This document shows, in pieces, positions 3,019-19,800 of a stretch of DNA of 64,000 nt (positions within the stretch are counted from its first letter, which is position 1; the number at the start of each line of letters is the position of its first letter). The position numbers were made by a program, and so were the translations under genes. Under the pieces are notes generated by a model that saw only the letters and a list, made by a program, of their open reading frames with translations, was not told the DNA's origin and ran no database searches. This DNA is from Thecamonas trahens ATCC 50062 (taxonomy: Eukaryota > Protista > Apusomonadida): the NCBI RefSeq assembly GCF_000142905.1, contig NW_013657643.1, positions 204,054 to 268,053 on the forward strand, given 5' to 3'.

Positions 3019-4878
3019 CTACCGCGAGAGCGCCGCCACTTCCATCTCGGTTAGCGCCGCCCGCAGCTCGCGGACCGAGGCCTCGAGCTTGGTCTGCTTG
3101 CTTCGCGCCTTGCGCTCTGCCACGCCCGCCCGCTCTGCCGCAAACTCGGCTTCTGCGCACTGAATCTTGAGTGCAACCCAGTTGGCACGGACCTCGTTGG
3201 CCTCGGCCACCGCCGCCGCCTGCTCGTCGACCGACGCCTGCAGCAGCGTCTCGAGTGCATGCAGTCTCACTTCGGCCTCTGTCTCTCCGTCGACCATCTC
3301 GCGTGGCAAATCCACGCTCCCTACAGACGGCGTGTACATGGGGACAACCTTGCGTAGGGCCTCATTCTCTGCCCGCAGCCGCGCCAGCTCGTCAGTTTCG
3401 GGAATAGGCGCCACGGCGAGCGCTGCGGCGGGCGCGGGCGTTGGGACAGGCTCTGCTGCTCGGCTCTGCAGTGCAGCCTCGAGCTGCGCGATCCGCTCAT
3501 CGCGGACGCCCACCTCGGCCTCGAGTCGGGCAGTCTCAAGCATCCGCTCGCGGAGTTTGGCTCGGAGCCTACGGCTGGAGCGATCCTTGCCGCCCGGCCC
3601 GCTCGGCCCGCCTTCGCGCTTGCTTTCCAGCACTGCAATGCGGGCGCGTGCCGAGCTCAGCTCGGTCGTCAGCTTTGCCACCCGCGTGTTGGCACCGTCG
3701 AGCGCGCTCCGCATCGGTGCCAGAGCCTCGGCCTCGTGCTCGGCCTCTACAGCCTGAAGCGCCTTGGCGCTCCGCACCTGACGCTGTACCCGCATCAGCT
3801 GCGCCCGCAGCTGGGTAAGGGCAGCGTTCTTTTCGGTGAGCTCGGCCGTCAGCGCCTCGACCTCGCTCTCTAGCTCTCGTCGTGCCGTCCACGACTCGCC
3901 GAGCTGGACCTTGAGCACCGACTCGAGGACCGAGGCTTGTGACCGCGACGGCGTGGCCAGCTCTGCGGCCAGGCCAACTGCCAGTCCTGAGTTGCCCGTC
4001 TCGGGCGCCATGGACGCCAGCTCGACCTCGTCCAGCGCGTTGCGCGCGAGCGTCGGATATTTGGCGCGCCGGTCAGCCTGTACGTCAATCAGCGACACCG
4101 TCGACGGCACTGGTGGCGGGGAGGGAGCCAGACCCGAGCTTGAAGAGCTCTCGTACGACTCCTCATACGATGATGACGACGACGACGACGCCGATGAAGA
4201 CCCACAGCTGCCCGCATCGGCACTGCTCGTCTCGTCAGCGTCGGCCTGAGCAGCAAGTGCGGCATCAACAGCCGGCGTCGGCATTGGCGTTGGCAGCGAC
4301 GCCTGCGCCGCCACCACCTCCCTGTCCTCGACGTTGGTATCGGCCGACTCGGGCGGCGACGAGGCGCGTGCGGCGGCGACGGTAAACTCGAGAACGGCCG
4401 ACGCGATGTTGGCGGACTTGGGCTTGAGAGTCAGCGAGCGGCGGACGGGCTGCGGAGAGGTATGAGGCTCAGTGAGGACCACCGAGGCGTATTCTGCCAG
4501 ATCGAGTTCTGCGGTGGCAAGGACGACAGGCTTGGATGGAGCAGGCGGGTGAGCCGACTGGCGGCCCTTGCCCTTGCGGCGCGGGGTCGGCATCTCCACC
4601 AGCTCCATGCGGTAGACCTTGGCATCAAAGGCCGATCCGTCCGGCTTTGCGTAGAGCGAGGCGGCCATGGCAAGGGCGGCGTGCCACTCGACGGCACAGT
4701 CGATGAAGCAGTACTCTGCCGGAGGCGAGGCGGCGACTCGGCGCCCACGACTCCAGCGGACAGCCATGGGCGGCGCCAGCCATGAGTCGTCCACCAGCTC
4801 CACCTCGGCCTTCTCCACCACCACATGCAGAACCACCGTGGTCTTGGCCTTGCCCAGTCGCTTGGCGTACTTGAGCAT
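3019..4878 (-). CDS. NT-C2 (EEIG1/EHBP1-type) domain protein with Ser-rich linker and long coiled coil
   Basis: N-terminal VRWSRGRR...VEW...MAASLY...FDAKVY...LATAELDLAEYA fits NT-C2; heptad-rich C-terminal half. Start chosen at MLKYAKRLGK; the upstream ORF extension is repeat-derived. Confidence 0.8.
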   Translation of the reverse strand: MLKYAKRLGKAKTTVVLHVVVEKAEVELVDDSWLAPPMAVRWSRGRRVAASPPAEYCFIDCAVEWHAALAMAASLYAKPDGSAFDAKVYRMELVEMPTPRRKGKGRQSAHPPAPSKPVVLATAELDLAEYASVVLTEPHTSPQPVRRSLTLKPKSANIASAVLEFTVAAARASSPPESADTNVEDREVVAAQASLPTPMPTPAVDAALAAQADADETSSADAGSCGSSSASSSSSSSYEESYESSSSSGLAPSPPPVPSTVSLIDVQADRRAKYPTLARNALDEVELASMAPETGNSGLAVGLAAELATPSRSQASVLESVLKVQLGESWTARRELESEVEALTAELTEKNAALTQLRAQLMRVQRQVRSAKALQAVEAEHEAEALAPMRSALDGANTRVAKLTTELSSARARIAVLESKREGGPSGPGGKDRSSRRLRAKLRERMLETARLEAEVGVRDERIAQLEAALQSRAAEPVPTPAPAAALAVAPIPETDELARLRAENEALRKVVPMYTPSVGSVDLPREMVDGETEAEVRLHALETLLQASVDEQAAAVAEANEVRANWVALKIQCAEAEFAAERAGVAERKARSKQTKLEASVRELRAALTEMEVAALSR

Positions 4879-5650: not shown

Positions 5651-6667
5651 ATGGGGAAGACCAAGTCCGAGAGGCCATCCGCGCGGCGGTCGCCGTTCCA
5701 CCTGGCGACAGGCGCCATGACCTGGTCCAAGACCATGCAGCCGCACTCGGCGGGGGACGACCACTACTTTGTCTCCCGATCGGCTCGAGCCTACGGCGTC
5801 TTTGACGGCGTCTCGGGCTCAAACGGCAAGTACGGCACCGGGGCTGCCGAAGAGGCTGCAAACTTCATGTGCTTCAACGCATATGCCGCTGCGCACAAGG
5901 CCGCCGCAAGACGCCGTCCCGTTGATCCGGCCGCCATCATCATCAAGGCTCACAAGAGACTCGCACGCCTCGCCTCCGTTCGCGGCTCCACCACAGCCCT
6001 CGTCGCCGCTCTCCACTGGCGATCGACAAAGTCAGCGCTGCTCACCGTCGCAAACCTTGGCGATTGTGGCGTCCTCATCGTTCGCCCCTACGTCCACCCG
6101 CCACCTGCTCCCGCCTCGGGCATTGACCACGGCTCAACTGCCGCATCGAGCTCGGCCTCCGTCTCGGCCTCGGCCTTGTCCAGCGACCCCTACTCACCGG
6201 CGCCATCGTCATCTTCGTCGTCCTCTTCTTCGTCTTCTTCATCTTCGGCGTCCTCGTCCTCGTCCTCGTCACTGTCGTCCGCCGCATGCCGCGCTGAGCA
6301 GCTGCGCGCCCTGGCAGCCCATCGCTGGCCGCACCCCATGCGGCTGCCCAGAGTCAAGCTCGTCGGCTTCACCGAGCCTATGCGCCACGACTCGGGCATG
6401 GCCCATCCCCACACACTCTCCGCCACCACCCGCCACATCGACCGCAAGATCGACCGCACCGCCTTTGTCGTCCAGCCCGGCGACATCGTTGTCTTTGGCA
6501 CAGATGGCCTCTTTGACAACGTCGACAACAATACCATCGTCAGTGCCCTCACCCGCCATGCCACCGCCTCTCCACACTTTCTCGCCAAGCTCCTCGCCCG
6601 CCTCGCCCTCCACGGGCCCAAGCCCGACGACATCACCGTCCTCGTCGGCCGCGTCTACGAGCTGTAA
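5651..6667 (+). CDS. PP2C-family protein phosphatase, PTC7-like, with poly-Ser insertion
   Basis: GDD, YGVFDGVSG, GSTT, ANLGDCG, GTDGLFDNV and KPDDITV; all metal-binding aspartates are present. Confidence 0.9.
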   Translation: MGKTKSERPSARRSPFHLATGAMTWSKTMQPHSAGDDHYFVSRSARAYGVFDGVSGSNGKYGTGAAEEAANFMCFNAYAAAHKAAARRRPVDPAAIIIKAHKRLARLASVRGSTTALVAALHWRSTKSALLTVANLGDCGVLIVRPYVHPPPAPASGIDHGSTAASSSASVSASALSSDPYSPAPSSSSSSSSSSSSSSASSSSSSSLSSAACRAEQLRALAAHRWPHPMRLPRVKLVGFTEPMRHDSGMAHPHTLSATTRHIDRKIDRTAFVVQPGDIVVFGTDGLFDNVDNNTIVSALTRHATASPHFLAKLLARLALHGPKPDDITVLVGRVYEL

Positions 6668-15839: not shown

Positions 15840-16017
15840 ATGTACGTGTATGTATGTGTGTGGTGCGTGTGGGTATGGTGTATGGGTGTGTATGGGTGTG
15901 AGGAGAGGACCACGCGTGCAGGTGGCAAAAGGTACCTTGTCGGTTTCGTGCGGCAGGCCGTGGGCCGTGTGCGGGAGGGGAAGAGGGAGGTGGAGGAGTG
16001 GAGGACGAGAAGGGGGG

Positions 16018-16105
16018 AGGGTAGGTAGGTGTAGGTGTAGGTGTAGGTGTAGGTGTAGGTGTAGGGTATGTGTGTGTGTATGTATGTGTGTGTGTGTGTG
16101 TGTGT
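16018..16105. repeat. (GTAGGT)n and (GT)n microsatellites
   Basis: Direct reading. Confidence 0.9.
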
Positions 16106-16213
16106 CAAGTGGGAAGAGTGGCTGAGGTGGTGGTGGGGAGGTGAAGAAGGGGTGGAGGGGTGAAGAAGTCTGGCAAGGTGCTGCAAAGGGTGGTGCAAAA
16201 ATTAGTGGGAGGG

Positions 16214-16419
16214 NNNNNNNNNNNNNNNNNNNNNNNNNNNNNNNNNNNNNNNNNNNNNNNNNNNNNNNNNNNNNNNNNNNNNNNNNNNNNNNNNNNNNNN
16301 NNNNNNNNNNNNNNNNNNNNNNNNNNNNNNNNNNNNNNNNNNNNNNNNNNNNNNNNNNNNNNNNNNNNNNNNNNNNNNNNNNNNNNNNNNNNNNNNNNNN
16401 NNNNNNNNNNNNNNNNNNN
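16214..16419. other. Assembly gap (N run)
   Basis: Run of n. Confidence 1.
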
Positions 16420-16494: not shown

Positions 16495-19400
16495 ATGCAA
16501 GTGCTTTGGGTGGTGTGTGTAGTATGGGTGGGACTAGGGCTCATGGGTGGTGTGGCGGGCATCCTTACAGGCTTTGGTACACCTGAGAACATCACCATTG
16601 CTGGCTTGTTCCCCCTCACTGGCGGCCTCGCCGCTGGTGGTGTCGAGCGGGAGGCCGCCTTCCGCATGGGCATCCAGCACATCAACGCAGACCGAAATCT
16701 CCTTCCGGACGTATGTAGCAGAGGAAGGGCGAGGATGGTGTGTGTTTGTGGGGTGTGGGTGTGTGGGGGTGTGTGGGTGTGTGGGGTGTGTGGGGGGTGT
16801 GGGGGTGTGGGTGTGGGGTGTGGGGGGAAGGCGGCGTCTGGTCCAGGGGTTTGTCGTGGTCAAACGTGCGTCAGTCCGAGGTTGTGAGTGGGATGACGCG
16901 CGATGGGATCAGATGAAGGTGGAGCTGGCTCACGATGAGATGGAGTGGATGGAATTGGTGATGGACAGACGAAGATTATCGGGGTGTCGTTTGATACACA
17001 GACGACGCCATCAGGAGGCATGGTGTCGGCACTCGAGGCGACCAAAGACCCAAGCCTGGTGGCCATTGTCGGGGCAGCGTCATCCTCGGTCTCGCGGGCT
17101 GTACAGCAAGTGGCCTCGATCTTCGAGATTCCGCAGATCTCGTACTCGTCGACAGCGTCGCCACTCTCGAACAAGATCCTCTATCCGTACTTTTTCCGTG
17201 TCGTGGCGCCTGACTCGCTCCAGGGCTCAGCGCTGGCGTCGATTGTGCACTCGATCGGGTGGAGAAAAGCGGCGACGATGTACTCGAATGACGACTACGG
17301 GCTGTCGGGCGTGACCGCGTTTGCGCAACGGGCGTCAGACGTGGGAGTCTCGATCGAGGCCAACATTCCGTTTGCGCCGGGCGCCATCGAGTACGGCGTG
17401 GCGCTGGACCAGCTGGTTAAGCACCACGGCGTCCATGTGGTTTTTCTCAACTGTCTGGTGAGCGACGCAGTGGAGTTGTTCAAGGAGGCCGACCGACGCG
17501 GGCTGCTCGATGGGCAGTACGTGTGGGTGGGGACCGACGGATGGCTGCAGGACGAGCTGCTCAACGTAGGCCTCCCGTCGTCGAAGCTCATCGGCGTGCT
17601 CGGTCTCCGACCGGCGCTGCCATCGGGAGTGCGGCTCGAAGCGTTTCTCGACTCATGGGAGCAGCTGAACGCGACCGAGTTTGCCGGTGCGGGCGACCGA
17701 ACCGTCAACGTTTTCGCGCCGTACGCATACGACGCGCTGTACCAGGTGGCGCGGACAATTGATGCCATGATCCGCGGAAAGGCGAATGCCCTTGATGGCT
17801 CTGAGCTCCGGGCGTGGCTCTCCAACTCGAGCTATGAGGGCACGACGGGCCTGATCTCGTTTGACGAGAACTTTGACTGCATCGCCGCGTACTCGCTCGT
17901 CAACTACCGCGGCGGCGCCGGGTTTGAGATTGTGGGCCGGTGGCTCGCGGAGCAGCGGCTCGAGCTCGACCGCCCGATACTCTACTACGGCAACACAACG
18001 AGCCCGCCATACCTGCCGAGCCCGATGGCGAGCCCGAGCACGTCGTCAATTTCTGCGGGCCTTATTGGCGTCATTGCCGGCATGAGCGCATGCGTGTGCC
18101 TTGGCTTTGGCATCCTTGTGGTCCACAATCTGCGGCGGCGCAAGCACGTGGCGGCGCTCCAGCGTGAGAATCAGCAGCTGGACCGCGAGGCGCGGGCGCT
18201 TAACTCGCGGCTCAACGAGCTCGCCAAGGAGACACACGCATCGGGCTCTTCCACCCCGCCGACAATGGACCTGCCCATCAACCAGGTCATGTCGCTGCTG
18301 ACCTCGATTCGGGCCTCGACGCAGGATTCAGACATGATGGCCAAGCTCGACAAAGCTATCGAATCAATCCAGTCAAACATGCTGTTCCAGCCGTCGACAG
18401 CGATGTTTCCGGACGGGGAGGGCAACGACGACGTCAAGAACTTTGTGCAGGGCACCATCCTGACTAACGTGCCGACGCCATCAAACTCGTTGCAGCGGTC
18501 GGGCGCGGGCCTCCAGACGTACGGCAACGGGTCGGCGGCGAGCCTCACCCCCACGCCCAATTTGGCGGTGACGGTGGCCATGCCGATTCCTGCGGAACTT
18601 GGCGACGTGCTGGGCAAGCTTCGGACACTGGCGTTTGACGCCGAGGCGCTAGTCGCCAAGGATACGACACCGCTGCAGACGGTGTTCATGGCTGTGTGCA
18701 CCCAGAACGCACTGCTCTCACAGCTCCGGCTGGATCCGGTCATTGTGCGCGACGTCATGCTCGCGCTCGACCGGTACACGCCGCGGCTCAACGCGTATCA
18801 CAATGCACAGCGGGCAGCCAACATGGTCCAGTTTGTGCACTACGTGCTCTCTGTCACAGACCTGTACTCGCTCCTCTCACCTCGCGACACGTTTGCGGTC
18901 CTCTTCGCCGCCGCCATCAAGAACGTCGACCACCCTGGCTTCAATGCCTCGTTCCTGGTCCGGACGCGGCACAAGCTCGCGCTGCTGTACTCGAACCAGG
19001 CGGTGCTGGAAATGCATCACCTGGCGGTCTCAATGCAGCTAGTCTTTGAGCGGTTCAAGCTCTTTGACCAGCTGCTCGAGGAGGACATTACCGCCCTCCA
19101 CCACACCATTGTCGACCTTGTCCTCGCATCCGACATGCAGAAACACGTCGAGGTGACCTCACGGTTCTCGCTCCTCATCGACCCGACCGAGCCGTCGAAG
19201 CGGACAGCATGGAAGGCTGCGGTGGCAACCGACAATGGCTTTCGCAACTTGGTCCTCAAGATGGTGCTTAAGCTGGCGGACTTGTCCGACGCGGCGCGGC
19301 CGACCAAGATTGCTCGCGGCCTGGCGCTGCGGTCGATGATCGAGTCGTCGCTGCAGGGCGTGCAGGAGGCGGCGGCAGGCATCGAGGTGTCCCCGTTTAT

Positions 19401-19800
19401 GGACGGTGCCATGTCGTCGGTGGCAAAGTCACAGGAAGGAATCATCCGCTTTGTCACCCTCCCCATGTTCTCGGCCTTTGCCGAAGTCTTTACCCTCACC
19501 GAAGTGCTGCAGAACCTCTCGGACAACATGCTCTTCTGGCAGCGCGTTGTTCCGTCGACGCTCCAGCCGTTCTATGACGCGCTCCTCGCCTCTCACGCCG
19601 CCACCGCAGAGTCGATCCAGCCAGGCTCGTCCGCCGCGCTTGTCTCGGCGCAGAAGTCGCCTCTATCATCACCAGGAACCGGGGCGGCCATCACGGCGCC
19701 GAGGCCCAGCCAGAGCGAGGCCTCGCCGTCGTTGCCTACCCCTGCCACTCCCGCGCCGGCCAGCGCATCGATTGCATCGGCCGGAGGCGCGGAGCCATAG
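16495..19800 (+). CDS. Single-pass receptor: signal peptide, Venus-flytrap (ANF_receptor/PBP1) domain, TM, coiled coil, PDE8-like class I phosphodiesterase with substituted metal ligands; exons 16495-16710 and 16969-19800 (~1015 aa)
   Basis: Exon 1 MQVLWVVCVVWVGLGLMGGVAG...ITIAGLFP...INADRNLLPD, then a GTATGT...ACAG phase-0 intron. VFT motifs AIVGAASSSVS, IPQISYSSTASPLS, YPYFFRVVAPDS, YAYDA, YEGTTGLISFD. TM GLIGVIAGMSACVCLGFGILVV followed by RRRK. PDE motifs YHN, VDHPG, VLEMHH, VLASDM, KLADLS, SPFMD, SQ. Confidence 0.92.

What the first reader, a model, noticed from the sequence alone, without database searches (positions are those of the whole stretch)
18790..19460. The receptor's PDE domain looks like a pseudo-enzyme: three of four Zn ligands replaced, two by basic residues
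Seen: canonical YHNxxHAxD reads YHNAQRAAN, and canonical HDxDHPG reads KNVDHPG. In PDE4D numbering these correspond to H164->R, H200->K and D201->N. The catalytic-acid His (YHN), E in VLEMHH, D in KLADLS and the invariant purine-binding Gln (SQEG) are kept, but the clamp Phe is replaced by Ile. The ORF is otherwise intact, so this looks like selective loss rather than decay. Inference: the domain may be a cNMP-binding/sequestering module or an allosteric partner that heterodimerises with an active paralog (as GABA-B2 and receptor pseudokinases do). More speculatively, Arg/Lys may substitute for the metal's charge.
Basis: partly seen in the sequence, partly recalled or inferred. Interest (0 to 1): 0.8.

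Follow-up and report, generated by a model that had tools for sequence, protein, structure and literature searches.

The report
Receptor with a dead phosphodiesterase domain
A cell-surface receptor of the marine flagellate Thecamonas trahens carries a well-folded, evolutionarily conserved copy of the enzyme domain that normally destroys cAMP/cGMP, but with its metal-binding catalytic centre replaced, so it most likely signals without doing chemistry.

Summary
The gene is Thecamonas trahens AMSG_07791 (1015 aa; exons 16495-16710 and 16969-19800). Its layout is signal peptide, Venus-flytrap (ANF_receptor) domain, one TM helix, conserved juxtamembrane helix, then a class I PDE domain.

Aligned to PDE4D2, the PDE domain has H164R, H200K and D201N, so three of four Zn ligands and the only direct Mg ligand are gone. 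D167N is also present. H160, H204, E230, D318 and Q369 are kept.

- **Not an error:** two independent metagenome assemblies (about 99.5% nt identity) carry the same codons.
- **Not recent decay:** the genome's three VFT-PDE genes all lack H200. Their PDE domains form one clade with marine metagenome and metatranscriptome relatives, and every member that covers the site lacks H200 (K/R/K/K/I).
- **Still constrained:** the domain diverges about as slowly as the VFT, and it folds confidently as PDE4 (TM 0.85).

Best reading: an old, selectively maintained pseudo-PDE that acts as a non-hydrolytic output or adaptor module. Canonical cNMP binding is doubtful. No VFT-PDE paralog with an intact site exists, so "pairs with an active paralog" is unsupported. 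The scan's first-stage readers had noted the two paralogs separately. Activity was not tested.

The parts
16495..16710 (+). Exon 1: start codon, signal peptide and first VFT residues (72 codons).
   Evidence: Read from the sequence. Its translation equals the N-terminus of the database protein P0169 = AMSG_07791.
16711..16968 (+). Intron, 258 nt, GT..AG, rich in GT/GGTGTG repeats.
   Evidence: Exon 1 and exon 2 translations together match the 1015-aa P0169; they were compared separately.
16969..19800 (+). Exon 2: rest of the VFT, TM helix, juxtamembrane helices, linker, PDE-like domain, low-complexity tail and stop codon.
16990..17910 (+). Venus-flytrap ligand-binding domain (ANF_receptor, also matching Peripla_BP_6).
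   Evidence: Pfam PF01094, E 5.1e-56, 190.7 bits.
18049..18123 (+). Single transmembrane helix (residues 433-457), followed by an RRRK stop-transfer motif.
   Evidence: Hydrophobic stretch read directly from the sequence. No TM predictor was run.
18145..18393 (+). Conserved juxtamembrane helical region. It holds the motif QLDREARALNSRL, nearly invariant in the family, and a second conserved helix (LPINQ...IQSNMLFQP).
   Evidence: Three-way and six-way alignments. The coiled-coil or dimer role is inference.
18670..19620 (+). PDE-like (pseudo-PDE) domain with a complete all-helical PDE4-type fold.
   Evidence: Pfam PF00233, E 2.9e-54. PDE4D match E 2e-43. AF2 pLDDT 94.3, pTM 0.93. Foldseek TM 0.84-0.86 to PDE4D/4B.
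18811..18813 (+). Arg687 at the Zn ligand His164 position (PDE4D2 numbering).
   Evidence: The same codon is present in L015 and L021.
18919..18924 (+). Lys723-Asn724 in place of the HD dyad (His200 and Asp201: Zn and Zn/Mg ligands).
   Evidence: The same is present in L015 and L021.
19279..19290 (+). Asp843 (the retained Zn ligand Asp318) and Asp846 (N321D). N321D is shared by the three members of the subclade.
19333..19347 (+). Ser861 and Ser865 at the Ile336 and Phe340 positions, one face of the purine clamp.
   Evidence: Ungapped phmmer alignment and MAFFT table. Clamp residues are defined in PMC13095499.
19432..19443 (+). Gln894 (the retained invariant Gln369) and Ile897 (F372I, the other face of the clamp).

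Best explanation
AMSG_07791 of Thecamonas trahens is a single-pass, probably dimeric, Venus-flytrap receptor. Its cytoplasmic class I PDE domain is an ancient pseudo-enzyme kept by selection. The Zn/Mg centre that every active class I PDE needs has been dismantled (H164R, H200K, D201N), so the domain should not hydrolyse cAMP or cGMP by the canonical mechanism. The first loss, at H200, happened before the three Thecamonas paralogs and their marine relatives diverged. The fold has since been kept under purifying selection. The likeliest mode of action is as follows, and these steps are inferred, not shown. Ligand binding to the ectodomain is passed through the conserved juxtamembrane helix. This changes the conformation or pairing of the PDE-like domains. 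Those domains act as a non-catalytic output or adaptor surface, much as the kinase-homology domain does in receptor guanylyl cyclases. The conserved basic residues at 164 and 200 probably pair with the retained acidic residues (D318 and the new D321) to hold the former metal pocket together. Canonical purine binding is unlikely because both clamp faces are gone.
For: The motif substitutions were verified against solved PDE4D. The Zn ligands, the need for metals, the clamp residues and the D201N substrate-trap mutant come from PMC13095499. Independent assemblies carry the same codons. All three ANF_receptor loci of the genome are fused to PDE domains with K at position 200. The six VFT-PDE domains form one clade (100/98), with a subclade of ours + P0002 + P0026 (100/99). 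The five clade members that cover position 200 all lack His there: K, R, K, K, I. Against P0002, dN is 0.55 in the PDE domain and 0.43 in the VFT, but 1.29 in the linker and 1.24 in the tail. Polymorphisms in the PDE domains of the two species number 4 synonymous and 1 conservative nonsynonymous, binomial p about 0.02. The P0002 cluster holds a MERC fragment, P0174, identical to its PDE-like domain over 117 residues. P0026 is also from MERC. That MERC is built from metatranscriptomes is my own knowledge. The fold is confident: pLDDT 94.3 and TM 0.85 to PDE4D. Ten other PDE domains in the genome have intact sites, so canonical hydrolysis is provided elsewhere.
Against: No biochemical test was possible, and inactivity is inferred from residues alone. 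H160, H204, E230, H233, D318 and Q369 are retained in this protein, which leaves room for residual or altered chemistry or for ligand binding. dS is saturated between species, so dN/dS values are not reliable. Polymorphism counts are tiny. No expression data exist for the Thecamonas gene itself. The terminal branches of P0002 and P0026 are long (1.1-1.2), which may mean relaxed constraint there. One paralog (C3) has two frame breaks and may be dying. No interaction partner is known. Side-chain geometry in the former metal pocket could not be inspected.
Confidence: 0.75

Rival explanations
1. Non-hydrolytic cyclic-nucleotide sensor or sequestering module. The dead pocket still binds cAMP/cGMP, or a related nucleotide. 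Occupancy is coupled to the receptor, as degenerate EAL domains bind c-di-GMP in bacterial LapD and FimX.
For: This protein keeps Y159, H160, N161, D318 and the purine-reading Gln369. PDE4D2 with D201N alone still binds cAMP without cleaving it (PDB 2PW3; PMC13095499). P0002 also keeps Q369 and D318.
Against: Both clamp faces are lost (I336S, F340S, F372I), together with W332L and Y329A. In PDE4 the phosphate is held largely through the metals, which are absent here. Q369 is N in the ortholog-like P0026 and H/L/H in the other clade members. H160 is R in P0002. The canonical binding residues are therefore not what selection conserves across the clade.
Confidence: 0.2
2. Still an enzyme, with altered chemistry. 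Lys, Arg and the retained His residues carry out metal-independent or single-metal phosphodiester cleavage, possibly on a different substrate.
For: The general-acid His160, His204, Glu230, His233 and Asp318 are retained. Positively charged residues sit exactly where the metal was. A basic residue at 200 is kept as K or R in five of six members.
Against: I know of no precedent in the PF00233 family, and the literature searches found none. The ortholog P0002 has also lost His160 (R) and has Gly at 201. Paralogs lose D318 (C3: P; P0099: L). No consistent alternative catalytic set is conserved.
Confidence: 0.07
3. Allosteric partner of an active enzyme. The pseudo-PDE domain pairs with and regulates a catalytically competent PDE, either a paralogous receptor or a soluble PDE.
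For: Pseudoenzyme-enzyme pairing is common. The search also turned up tandem proteins from other organisms with a degenerate N-terminal PDE domain and an intact C-terminal one: P0025, P0033, P0038 and P0040. The genome has ten intact PDE domains.
Against: No VFT-PDE paralog with an intact site exists in this genome. None was found elsewhere within the limits of the searches. There is no evidence for any specific partner, and no complex prediction was run.
Confidence: 0.12
4. Artefact or decaying gene. The substitutions are sequencing or assembly errors, or the domain is a relic drifting neutrally.
For: The assembly has gaps nearby (N run 16214-16419). One paralog (C3) has two frame breaks at short T runs.
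Against: The codons are identical in two independent metagenome assemblies. The open frame is intact over 943 codons. Orthologs at 45% identity have intact frames in several samples. The domain's dN is less than half that of the linker and tail. The AF2 fold is confident.
Confidence: 0.03

Closest known systems
PDE4 / PDE8-type class I cyclic-nucleotide phosphodiesterase catalytic domain (PF00233; e.g. human PDE4D2, PDB 1OYN, 1PTW, 2PW3)
   Same: Same fold and clear homology. E is 2e-43 with 30-33% identity, TM is 0.85, and all helices are predicted. H160, H204, E230, H233, D318 and Q369 are retained. It groups weakly (85/82) with PDE4 and PDE8 in the tree.
   Different: Three of four Zn ligands and the Mg ligand are replaced (H164R, H200K, D201N). 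Both clamp faces are lost. There are no UCR, PAS or GAF regulatory domains. Instead it is the cytoplasmic part of a VFT receptor.
Natriuretic-peptide receptor / receptor guanylyl cyclase (ANF_receptor, TM, kinase-homology pseudokinase, coiled coil, cyclase) and the enzyme-less NPR-C
   Same: ANF_receptor ectodomain, a single TM helix, a juxtamembrane helical segment, and a dead-enzyme domain inside a cyclic-nucleotide-related receptor (architecture known from the literature).
   Different: There is no cyclase and no kinase-like domain. The dead domain here is a PDE fold and is the only cytoplasmic globular domain.
Rhodopsin-phosphodiesterase (Rh-PDE) of choanoflagellates
   Same: A sensory membrane module fused directly to a class I PDE domain in a close relative of animals (PMC12004702, listed).
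   Different: Rh-PDE is a light-regulated active enzyme with an intact metal site. Here the sensor is a VFT and the PDE site is dismantled.
Bacterial degenerate EAL/GGDEF receptors (LapD, FimX)
   Same: A transmembrane or signalling protein whose phosphodiesterase-type domain has lost catalysis and serves in signalling. This is an analogy of logic only.
   Different: The fold (EAL TIM-barrel) and ligand (c-di-GMP) are unrelated. Nucleotide binding is demonstrated there and is doubtful here.
Trypanosomatid receptor-type adenylate cyclases (VFT-like ectodomain, TM, cyclase)
   Same: A protist single-pass receptor that joins a periplasmic-binding-protein-type ectodomain to a cAMP-pathway domain (PMC6027212, listed).
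   Different: Their output domain is an active cyclase, not a PDE-like pseudo-enzyme.

Membership tests
Class I cyclic-nucleotide phosphodiesterase (PF00233), as a homologous family | Significant match to the PDEase_I profile over its whole length. | tested here: met
   184.7 bits against a cut-off of 24.8, profile positions 1-235 of 238. 188.8 bits in the genome scan.
Class I cyclic-nucleotide phosphodiesterase (PF00233), as a homologous family | All-helical PDE catalytic-domain fold. | tested here: met
   AF2 pLDDT 94.3 and pTM 0.93. Foldseek TM 0.84-0.86 and rmsd 2-2.7 A to PDE4D/4B.
Class I cyclic-nucleotide phosphodiesterase, as an active enzyme | Four Zn ligands: H164, H200, D201, D318 (PDE4D2 numbering). 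| tested here: not met
   The residues are R, K, N, D, so only D318 is kept. Ligand identities are from PMC13095499.
Class I cyclic-nucleotide phosphodiesterase, as an active enzyme | Mg-binding Asp of the HD dyad (D201). | tested here: not met
   Asn724. D201N is the engineered substitution in the PDE4D2-cAMP substrate complex 2PW3.
Class I cyclic-nucleotide phosphodiesterase, as an active enzyme | General-acid His of the YHN motif (H160). | tested here: met
   His683 is kept. It is lost (R) in the ortholog P0002.
Class I cyclic-nucleotide phosphodiesterase, as an active enzyme | Invariant purine-reading Gln (Q369) and hydrophobic clamp (I336, F340, F372). | tested here: not met
   Gln894 is kept, but the clamp reads S, S, I. 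Gln is not conserved in the clade.
Class I cyclic-nucleotide phosphodiesterase, as an active enzyme | Measurable cAMP/cGMP hydrolysis. | not testable with these tools
   Needs a recombinant protein assay.
Pseudo-enzyme (operational definition) | Homolog of an enzyme family that lacks residues essential for catalysis. | tested here: met
Pseudo-enzyme (operational definition) | Retained by selection rather than decaying: intact frame, conserved in orthologs, constrained substitution pattern. | tested here: met
   Orthologs and paralogs have intact frames. The clade is monophyletic, and all five members that cover position 200 lack His there. dN is 0.55 in the domain against 1.2-1.3 in the linker and tail. 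Polymorphisms are 4 synonymous to 1 nonsynonymous. dS is saturated, so this is qualitative.
Pseudo-enzyme (operational definition) | Demonstrated lack of activity and a demonstrated non-catalytic role. | not testable with these tools
   Needs biochemistry and genetics.
ANF_receptor-type single-pass receptors (natriuretic-peptide receptor-like) | Extracellular ANF_receptor VFT domain behind a signal peptide, followed by one TM helix. | tested here: met
   PF01094 E 5.1e-56. The signal-peptide-like N-terminus and one hydrophobic helix were read from the sequence. No dedicated predictor was run.
ANF_receptor-type single-pass receptors (natriuretic-peptide receptor-like) | Cytoplasmic kinase-homology and guanylyl-cyclase domains. 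| tested here: not met
   Only ANF_receptor, Peripla_BP_6 and PDEase_I match at E <= 0.01.
LapD/FimX-type degenerate-PDE nucleotide receptors | EAL-fold domain that binds c-di-GMP without hydrolysis. | tested here: not met
   The domain is PF00233, an HD-type helical fold, not EAL. This is an analogy only. Nucleotide binding is not testable here.

The most novel reading that the evidence does not exclude
The VFT-PDE clade is a eukaryotic counterpart of bacterial LapD-type receptors: a surface receptor whose dead class I PDE domain has become a sensor. The sensor would read a cyclic or linear nucleotide, or another phospho-ligand that fits the widened, more polar pocket lined by Arg, Lys and Asp. 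Extracellular ligand binding would then be coupled to intracellular second-messenger state, in either direction, without turnover. This would be the first natural class I PDE fold working as a receptor rather than an enzyme.
Probability: 0.2. Interest if true: 0.8.

Novelty: new variant of a known kind. Interest (0 to 1): 0.55.

Why it matters
Class I PDEs are among the best-studied signalling enzymes and drug targets. I could find no described natural family in which the PF00233 fold is kept while the metal centre is dismantled. I also found no description of a Venus-flytrap-TM-PDE receptor architecture. The library is limited, so absence of a paper is not proof.

Here a whole small clade of such receptors exists in apusomonads, the sister group of animals and fungi. 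It has been kept across species divergence. It would add PDEs to the enzyme families known to give rise to pseudo-enzyme signalling modules. It offers a natural experiment on what holds the PDE fold together without Zn/Mg. It also gives a tractable entry into how early relatives of animals wired extracellular sensing to cyclic-nucleotide pathways.

There is an annotation point too. The paralog KNC52294.1 is named "cAMP-specific phosphodiesterase-4 B isoform". Its residues argue against that name.

Tried and rejected
**Sequencing error.** Rejected: two independent metagenome scaffolds carry the same codons.

**Recent decay.** Rejected by the clade-wide pattern and the constraint measures.

**Active VFT-PDE paralog.** I searched the whole genome with PF00233 and PF01094. 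There are only three VFT loci, and all have K at position 200.

**More VFT-PDE relatives.**
- Word searches with the PDE region, the VFT region and a family profile found only P0001 and P0002. They missed even P0022 and P0099, so their blanks mean little.
- The full HMMER scan added P0022, P0026 and P0099.
- The JGI metagenome scan found nothing.
- The ESM Atlas gave no usable hit.

**Other checks that led nowhere.**
- P0010, a strong VFT hit, is a tandem-VFT protein without a PDE domain.
- Synteny with the P0002 contig (FAM221 neighbour) is absent in the window.
- Between-species dN/dS was computed but dS is saturated, so I used only the contrast in dN between segments.
- Literature searches for class I pseudo-PDEs or for Thecamonas PDEs returned only bacterial EAL or c-di-AMP cases and unrelated papers.

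**Not done.**
- No complex prediction was run, because I make no specific binding claim.
- Side-chain geometry of Arg687 and Lys723 could not be inspected, because model coordinates are not exposed.
Exons were compared separately with the database protein P0169.
Full report
**What is there**

The window is GC-rich eukaryotic DNA with introns, microsatellites and scaffold gaps. An exact look-up identifies the gene as AMSG_07791 of Thecamonas trahens ATCC 50062. The protein (KNC51722.1 / XP_013755851.1, 1015 aa) is annotated only as an uncharacterised, PDEase-domain protein.

My gene model is:
- exon 1: 16495-16710
- intron: 16711-16968, GT..AG
- exon 2: 16969-19800

Exon by exon, this model reproduces that protein exactly. 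Pfam finds ANF_receptor (5.1e-56) and PDEase_I (2.9e-54). Between them lie one hydrophobic helix (18049-18123), an RRRK stop-transfer motif, a strongly conserved juxtamembrane helical region (18145-18393) and a poorly conserved linker.

**Checking the observation**

phmmer aligns the domain to solved PDE4D/4B catalytic domains at E about 2e-43, without gaps over the motifs. Chain index + 78 gives PDE4D2 numbering.

| PDE4D2 position | Role | This protein |
|---|---|---|
| H160 | general acid | H683, kept |
| H164 | Zn ligand | R687 |
| D167 | conserved Asp of the HAxD motif | N690 |
| H200 | Zn ligand | K723 |
| D201 | Zn and Mg ligand | N724 |
| H204, E230, H233 | conserved site residues | kept |
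| D318 | Zn ligand | D843, kept |
| N321 | conserved Asn of the ADLSN motif | D846 |
| I336, F340 | one clamp face | S861, S865 |
| Q369 | purine-reading Gln | Q894, kept |
| F372 | other clamp face | I897 |

W332L and Y329A are also present.

A recent review states that Zn is held by the residues equivalent to H164, H200, D201 and D318. It also states that Mg is held by the HD Asp, and that both metals are essential. It places F372 on one side of the purine and I336/F340 on the other. It reports that PDE4D2 carrying D201N was crystallised with unhydrolysed cAMP (PDB 2PW3) (PMC13095499).

**Is it an error?**

Two independent metagenome scaffolds carry the same gene. They are L015 (ENA ERZ23486198, 99.55% nt identity) and L021 (ERZ505273). 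The differences from the window are nine coding substitutions, none of them at the critical codons.

**Is it unusual?**

A full HMMER scan of 1.84 billion representative proteins gave 9064 PDE hits. Among 174 domain stretches from the best 150 proteins, 150 have all of H160, H164, H200, D201 and D318.

**Family context**

The Thecamonas genome has 14 PDEase_I hits and exactly three ANF_receptor loci. Each VFT lies upstream of a PDE domain: contig 37 (this gene), contig 4 (KNC52294.1) and contig 3.

All three have Lys at position 200.
- The contig 4 paralog keeps H164, D201 and D318 but has Q369H and altered clamp residues.
- The contig 3 paralog also loses D318 and Q369. It has two frame breaks at short T runs, so it is either a pseudogene or poorly sequenced.

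Hence no VFT-PDE with an intact site exists in this genome. Ten other PDE domains are intact.

Three relatives turned up outside the genome.

| Protein | Source | State |
|---|---|---|
| P0002 (1076 aa) | Tara Oceans metagenomes, four assemblies from different samples | 45-54% identical by domain. H160R, H164R, H200R, D201G. D318, N321D, Q369 and F372I as here |
| P0099 (1056 aa) | Same Tara sample as P0002; Pfam confirms VFT + PDE | H164 and D201 kept. H200I, D318L, Q369H |
| P0026 (261 aa) | Fragment from the MERC catalogue | D318 and N321D kept. Q369N |

A maximum-likelihood tree of 42 PDE domains puts the six VFT-linked domains in one clade (100/98). It has a subclade of this gene + P0002 + P0026 (100/99), and a second group of contig 4 + contig 3 (93/83) with P0099. 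PDE4 and PDE8 are the nearest active groups, with weak support.

The simplest history is that H200 was lost before the family diversified. Different lineages then shed further ligands. A basic residue is kept at 200 in five of six members. Position 164 is Arg in both members of our subclade that cover it.

**Is the dead domain under constraint?**

- **Divergence by segment.** Against P0002, identity is 53.6% in the VFT and 44.7% in the PDE-like domain, but 20% in the linker and 26.5% in the tail. dN is 0.43, 0.55, 1.29 and 1.24 respectively. dS is saturated, so I use only the contrast in dN.
- **Polymorphism.** Within-species differences in the PDE-like domains of the two species number four synonymous and one conservative nonsynonymous (L to M). 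All five nonsynonymous differences in the Thecamonas gene fall outside the domain. The binomial p is about 0.02 against a neutral expectation of roughly 72-75% nonsynonymous. These are small numbers and only suggestive.
- **Expression.** MERC fragments match the P0002 PDE-like domain (P0174, 117 of 117 residues) and P0099 (P0177). By my own knowledge MERC is assembled from Tara metatranscriptomes. If so, the orthologs are transcribed.
- **Fold.** AlphaFold2 predicts a complete PDE fold with pLDDT 94.3 and pTM 0.93. Foldseek aligns it to PDE4D/4B at TM 0.84-0.86.

**How it most likely works**

*Shown:* the fold is retained, the metal ligands and clamp are replaced, the pattern is old and conserved, and the architecture is that of a single-pass VFT receptor.

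*Inferred:* the domain cannot carry out canonical metal-dependent cNMP hydrolysis. It serves instead as a non-catalytic output or adaptor module. Its conformation or pairing would be set by the ectodomain through the near-invariant juxtamembrane helix. This is analogous to the kinase-homology domain of receptor guanylyl cyclases.

The conserved Arg164 and Lys/Arg200, together with retained Asp318 and the subclade-specific Asp321, suggest a salt-bridge network that replaces the metal cluster. I could not inspect the model's side chains.

A canonical cNMP-sensor role remains possible for this particular protein, since Q369, H160 and D318 are kept and D201N is a known substrate trap. It is weakened by the loss of both clamp faces and by the non-conservation of Q369 and H160 across the clade. 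Altered, metal-free catalysis has no consistent conserved residue set. Pairing with an active VFT-PDE paralog is excluded for this genome. Pairing with a soluble PDE is untested.

**Comparison with what is known**

By homology this is a class I PDE domain nearest PDE4/PDE8. By the defining active-site features it fails membership as an active PDE. The receptor layout resembles natriuretic-peptide receptors, trypanosome receptor cyclases and choanoflagellate Rh-PDE, but with a dead PDE as output. The logic resembles bacterial LapD and FimX, which use an unrelated fold. Four literature searches found no description of a natural class I pseudo-PDE, of a VFT-PDE receptor, or of Thecamonas PDEs. 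The library is incomplete, so this is not proof of novelty.

**Limits**

- No biochemistry was possible.
- There are only six clade members, from perhaps three organisms.
- The word-based protein searches are demonstrably insensitive here.
- Only the top 150 of 9064 HMMER hits could be inspected. An intact-site VFT-PDE with a distant PDE domain elsewhere in nature cannot be excluded.

**Earlier notes of this scan**

First-stage readers had separately flagged this gene as a VFT-PDE receptor, two further VFT-PDE loci in the genome, and a RegA-like dead PDE. I reached the paralogs and the RegA-like gene independently through the genome search. Those notes are unchecked and are not used as evidence.

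**Verdict**

The specific functional proposals are only partly supported. This is a new variant of a known kind, of moderate-to-good interest, and it awaits a simple activity, metal and binding assay.

Noticed in passing
G000 contig 6, about 307419-308078 (L013; open frame L013:1438-3399:-): A fourth degenerate PDE in the same genome. It has a response-regulator receiver domain plus a PDEase_I domain (RegA-like layout). The motifs read YHSFRRSVD (N161S, H164R) and AFQMGHTG (HD dyad replaced by FQ). D318 is kept. It groups with the intact paralog L010 (98/84). The H164R change recurs independently here.
   Followed up: partly
G000 contig 3, 542667-545235 (L018, local about 4665-4675 and 6075-6090): The third VFT-PDE paralog has two frame breaks, one in the VFT and one just before the AIKDIGHPG motif. 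Both are at short T runs. It is either a pseudogene or has homopolymer sequencing errors. It has also lost D318 and Q369.
   Followed up: partly
G000 contig 4, 570193-572784 (L017:4173-7133; P0022 = KNC52294.1): The second VFT-PDE paralog is named 'cAMP-specific phosphodiesterase-4 B isoform' in the public record. It has a VFT ectodomain, H200K, Q369H and altered clamp residues. The name looks like an automatic mis-annotation.
   Followed up: partly
Proteins P0025, P0033, P0038, P0040 (also P0076, P0127), from the representative search: Tandem-PDE proteins from unidentified organisms. The N-terminal PDEase_I domain is degenerate at the metal ligands (for example H200 replaced by I, L, Y or C) and the C-terminal one is intact. 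This is a pseudo-PDE plus PDE layout, reminiscent of pseudokinase-kinase tandems.
   Followed up: partly
window 16000-16110 and 16720-16830: GT-rich microsatellite-like arrays (GGTGTA and GTGTGG-type repeats) lie upstream of the gene and fill much of its first intron. A scaffold gap (N run 16214-16419) lies just upstream of the start codon.
   Followed up: no
window 18145-18231: The juxtamembrane motif QLDREARALNSRL is almost invariant across paralogs and orthologs that are otherwise 30-50% identical. It is the best-conserved cytoplasmic element of the family and a likely signal-transmission or dimerisation helix.
   Followed up: partly
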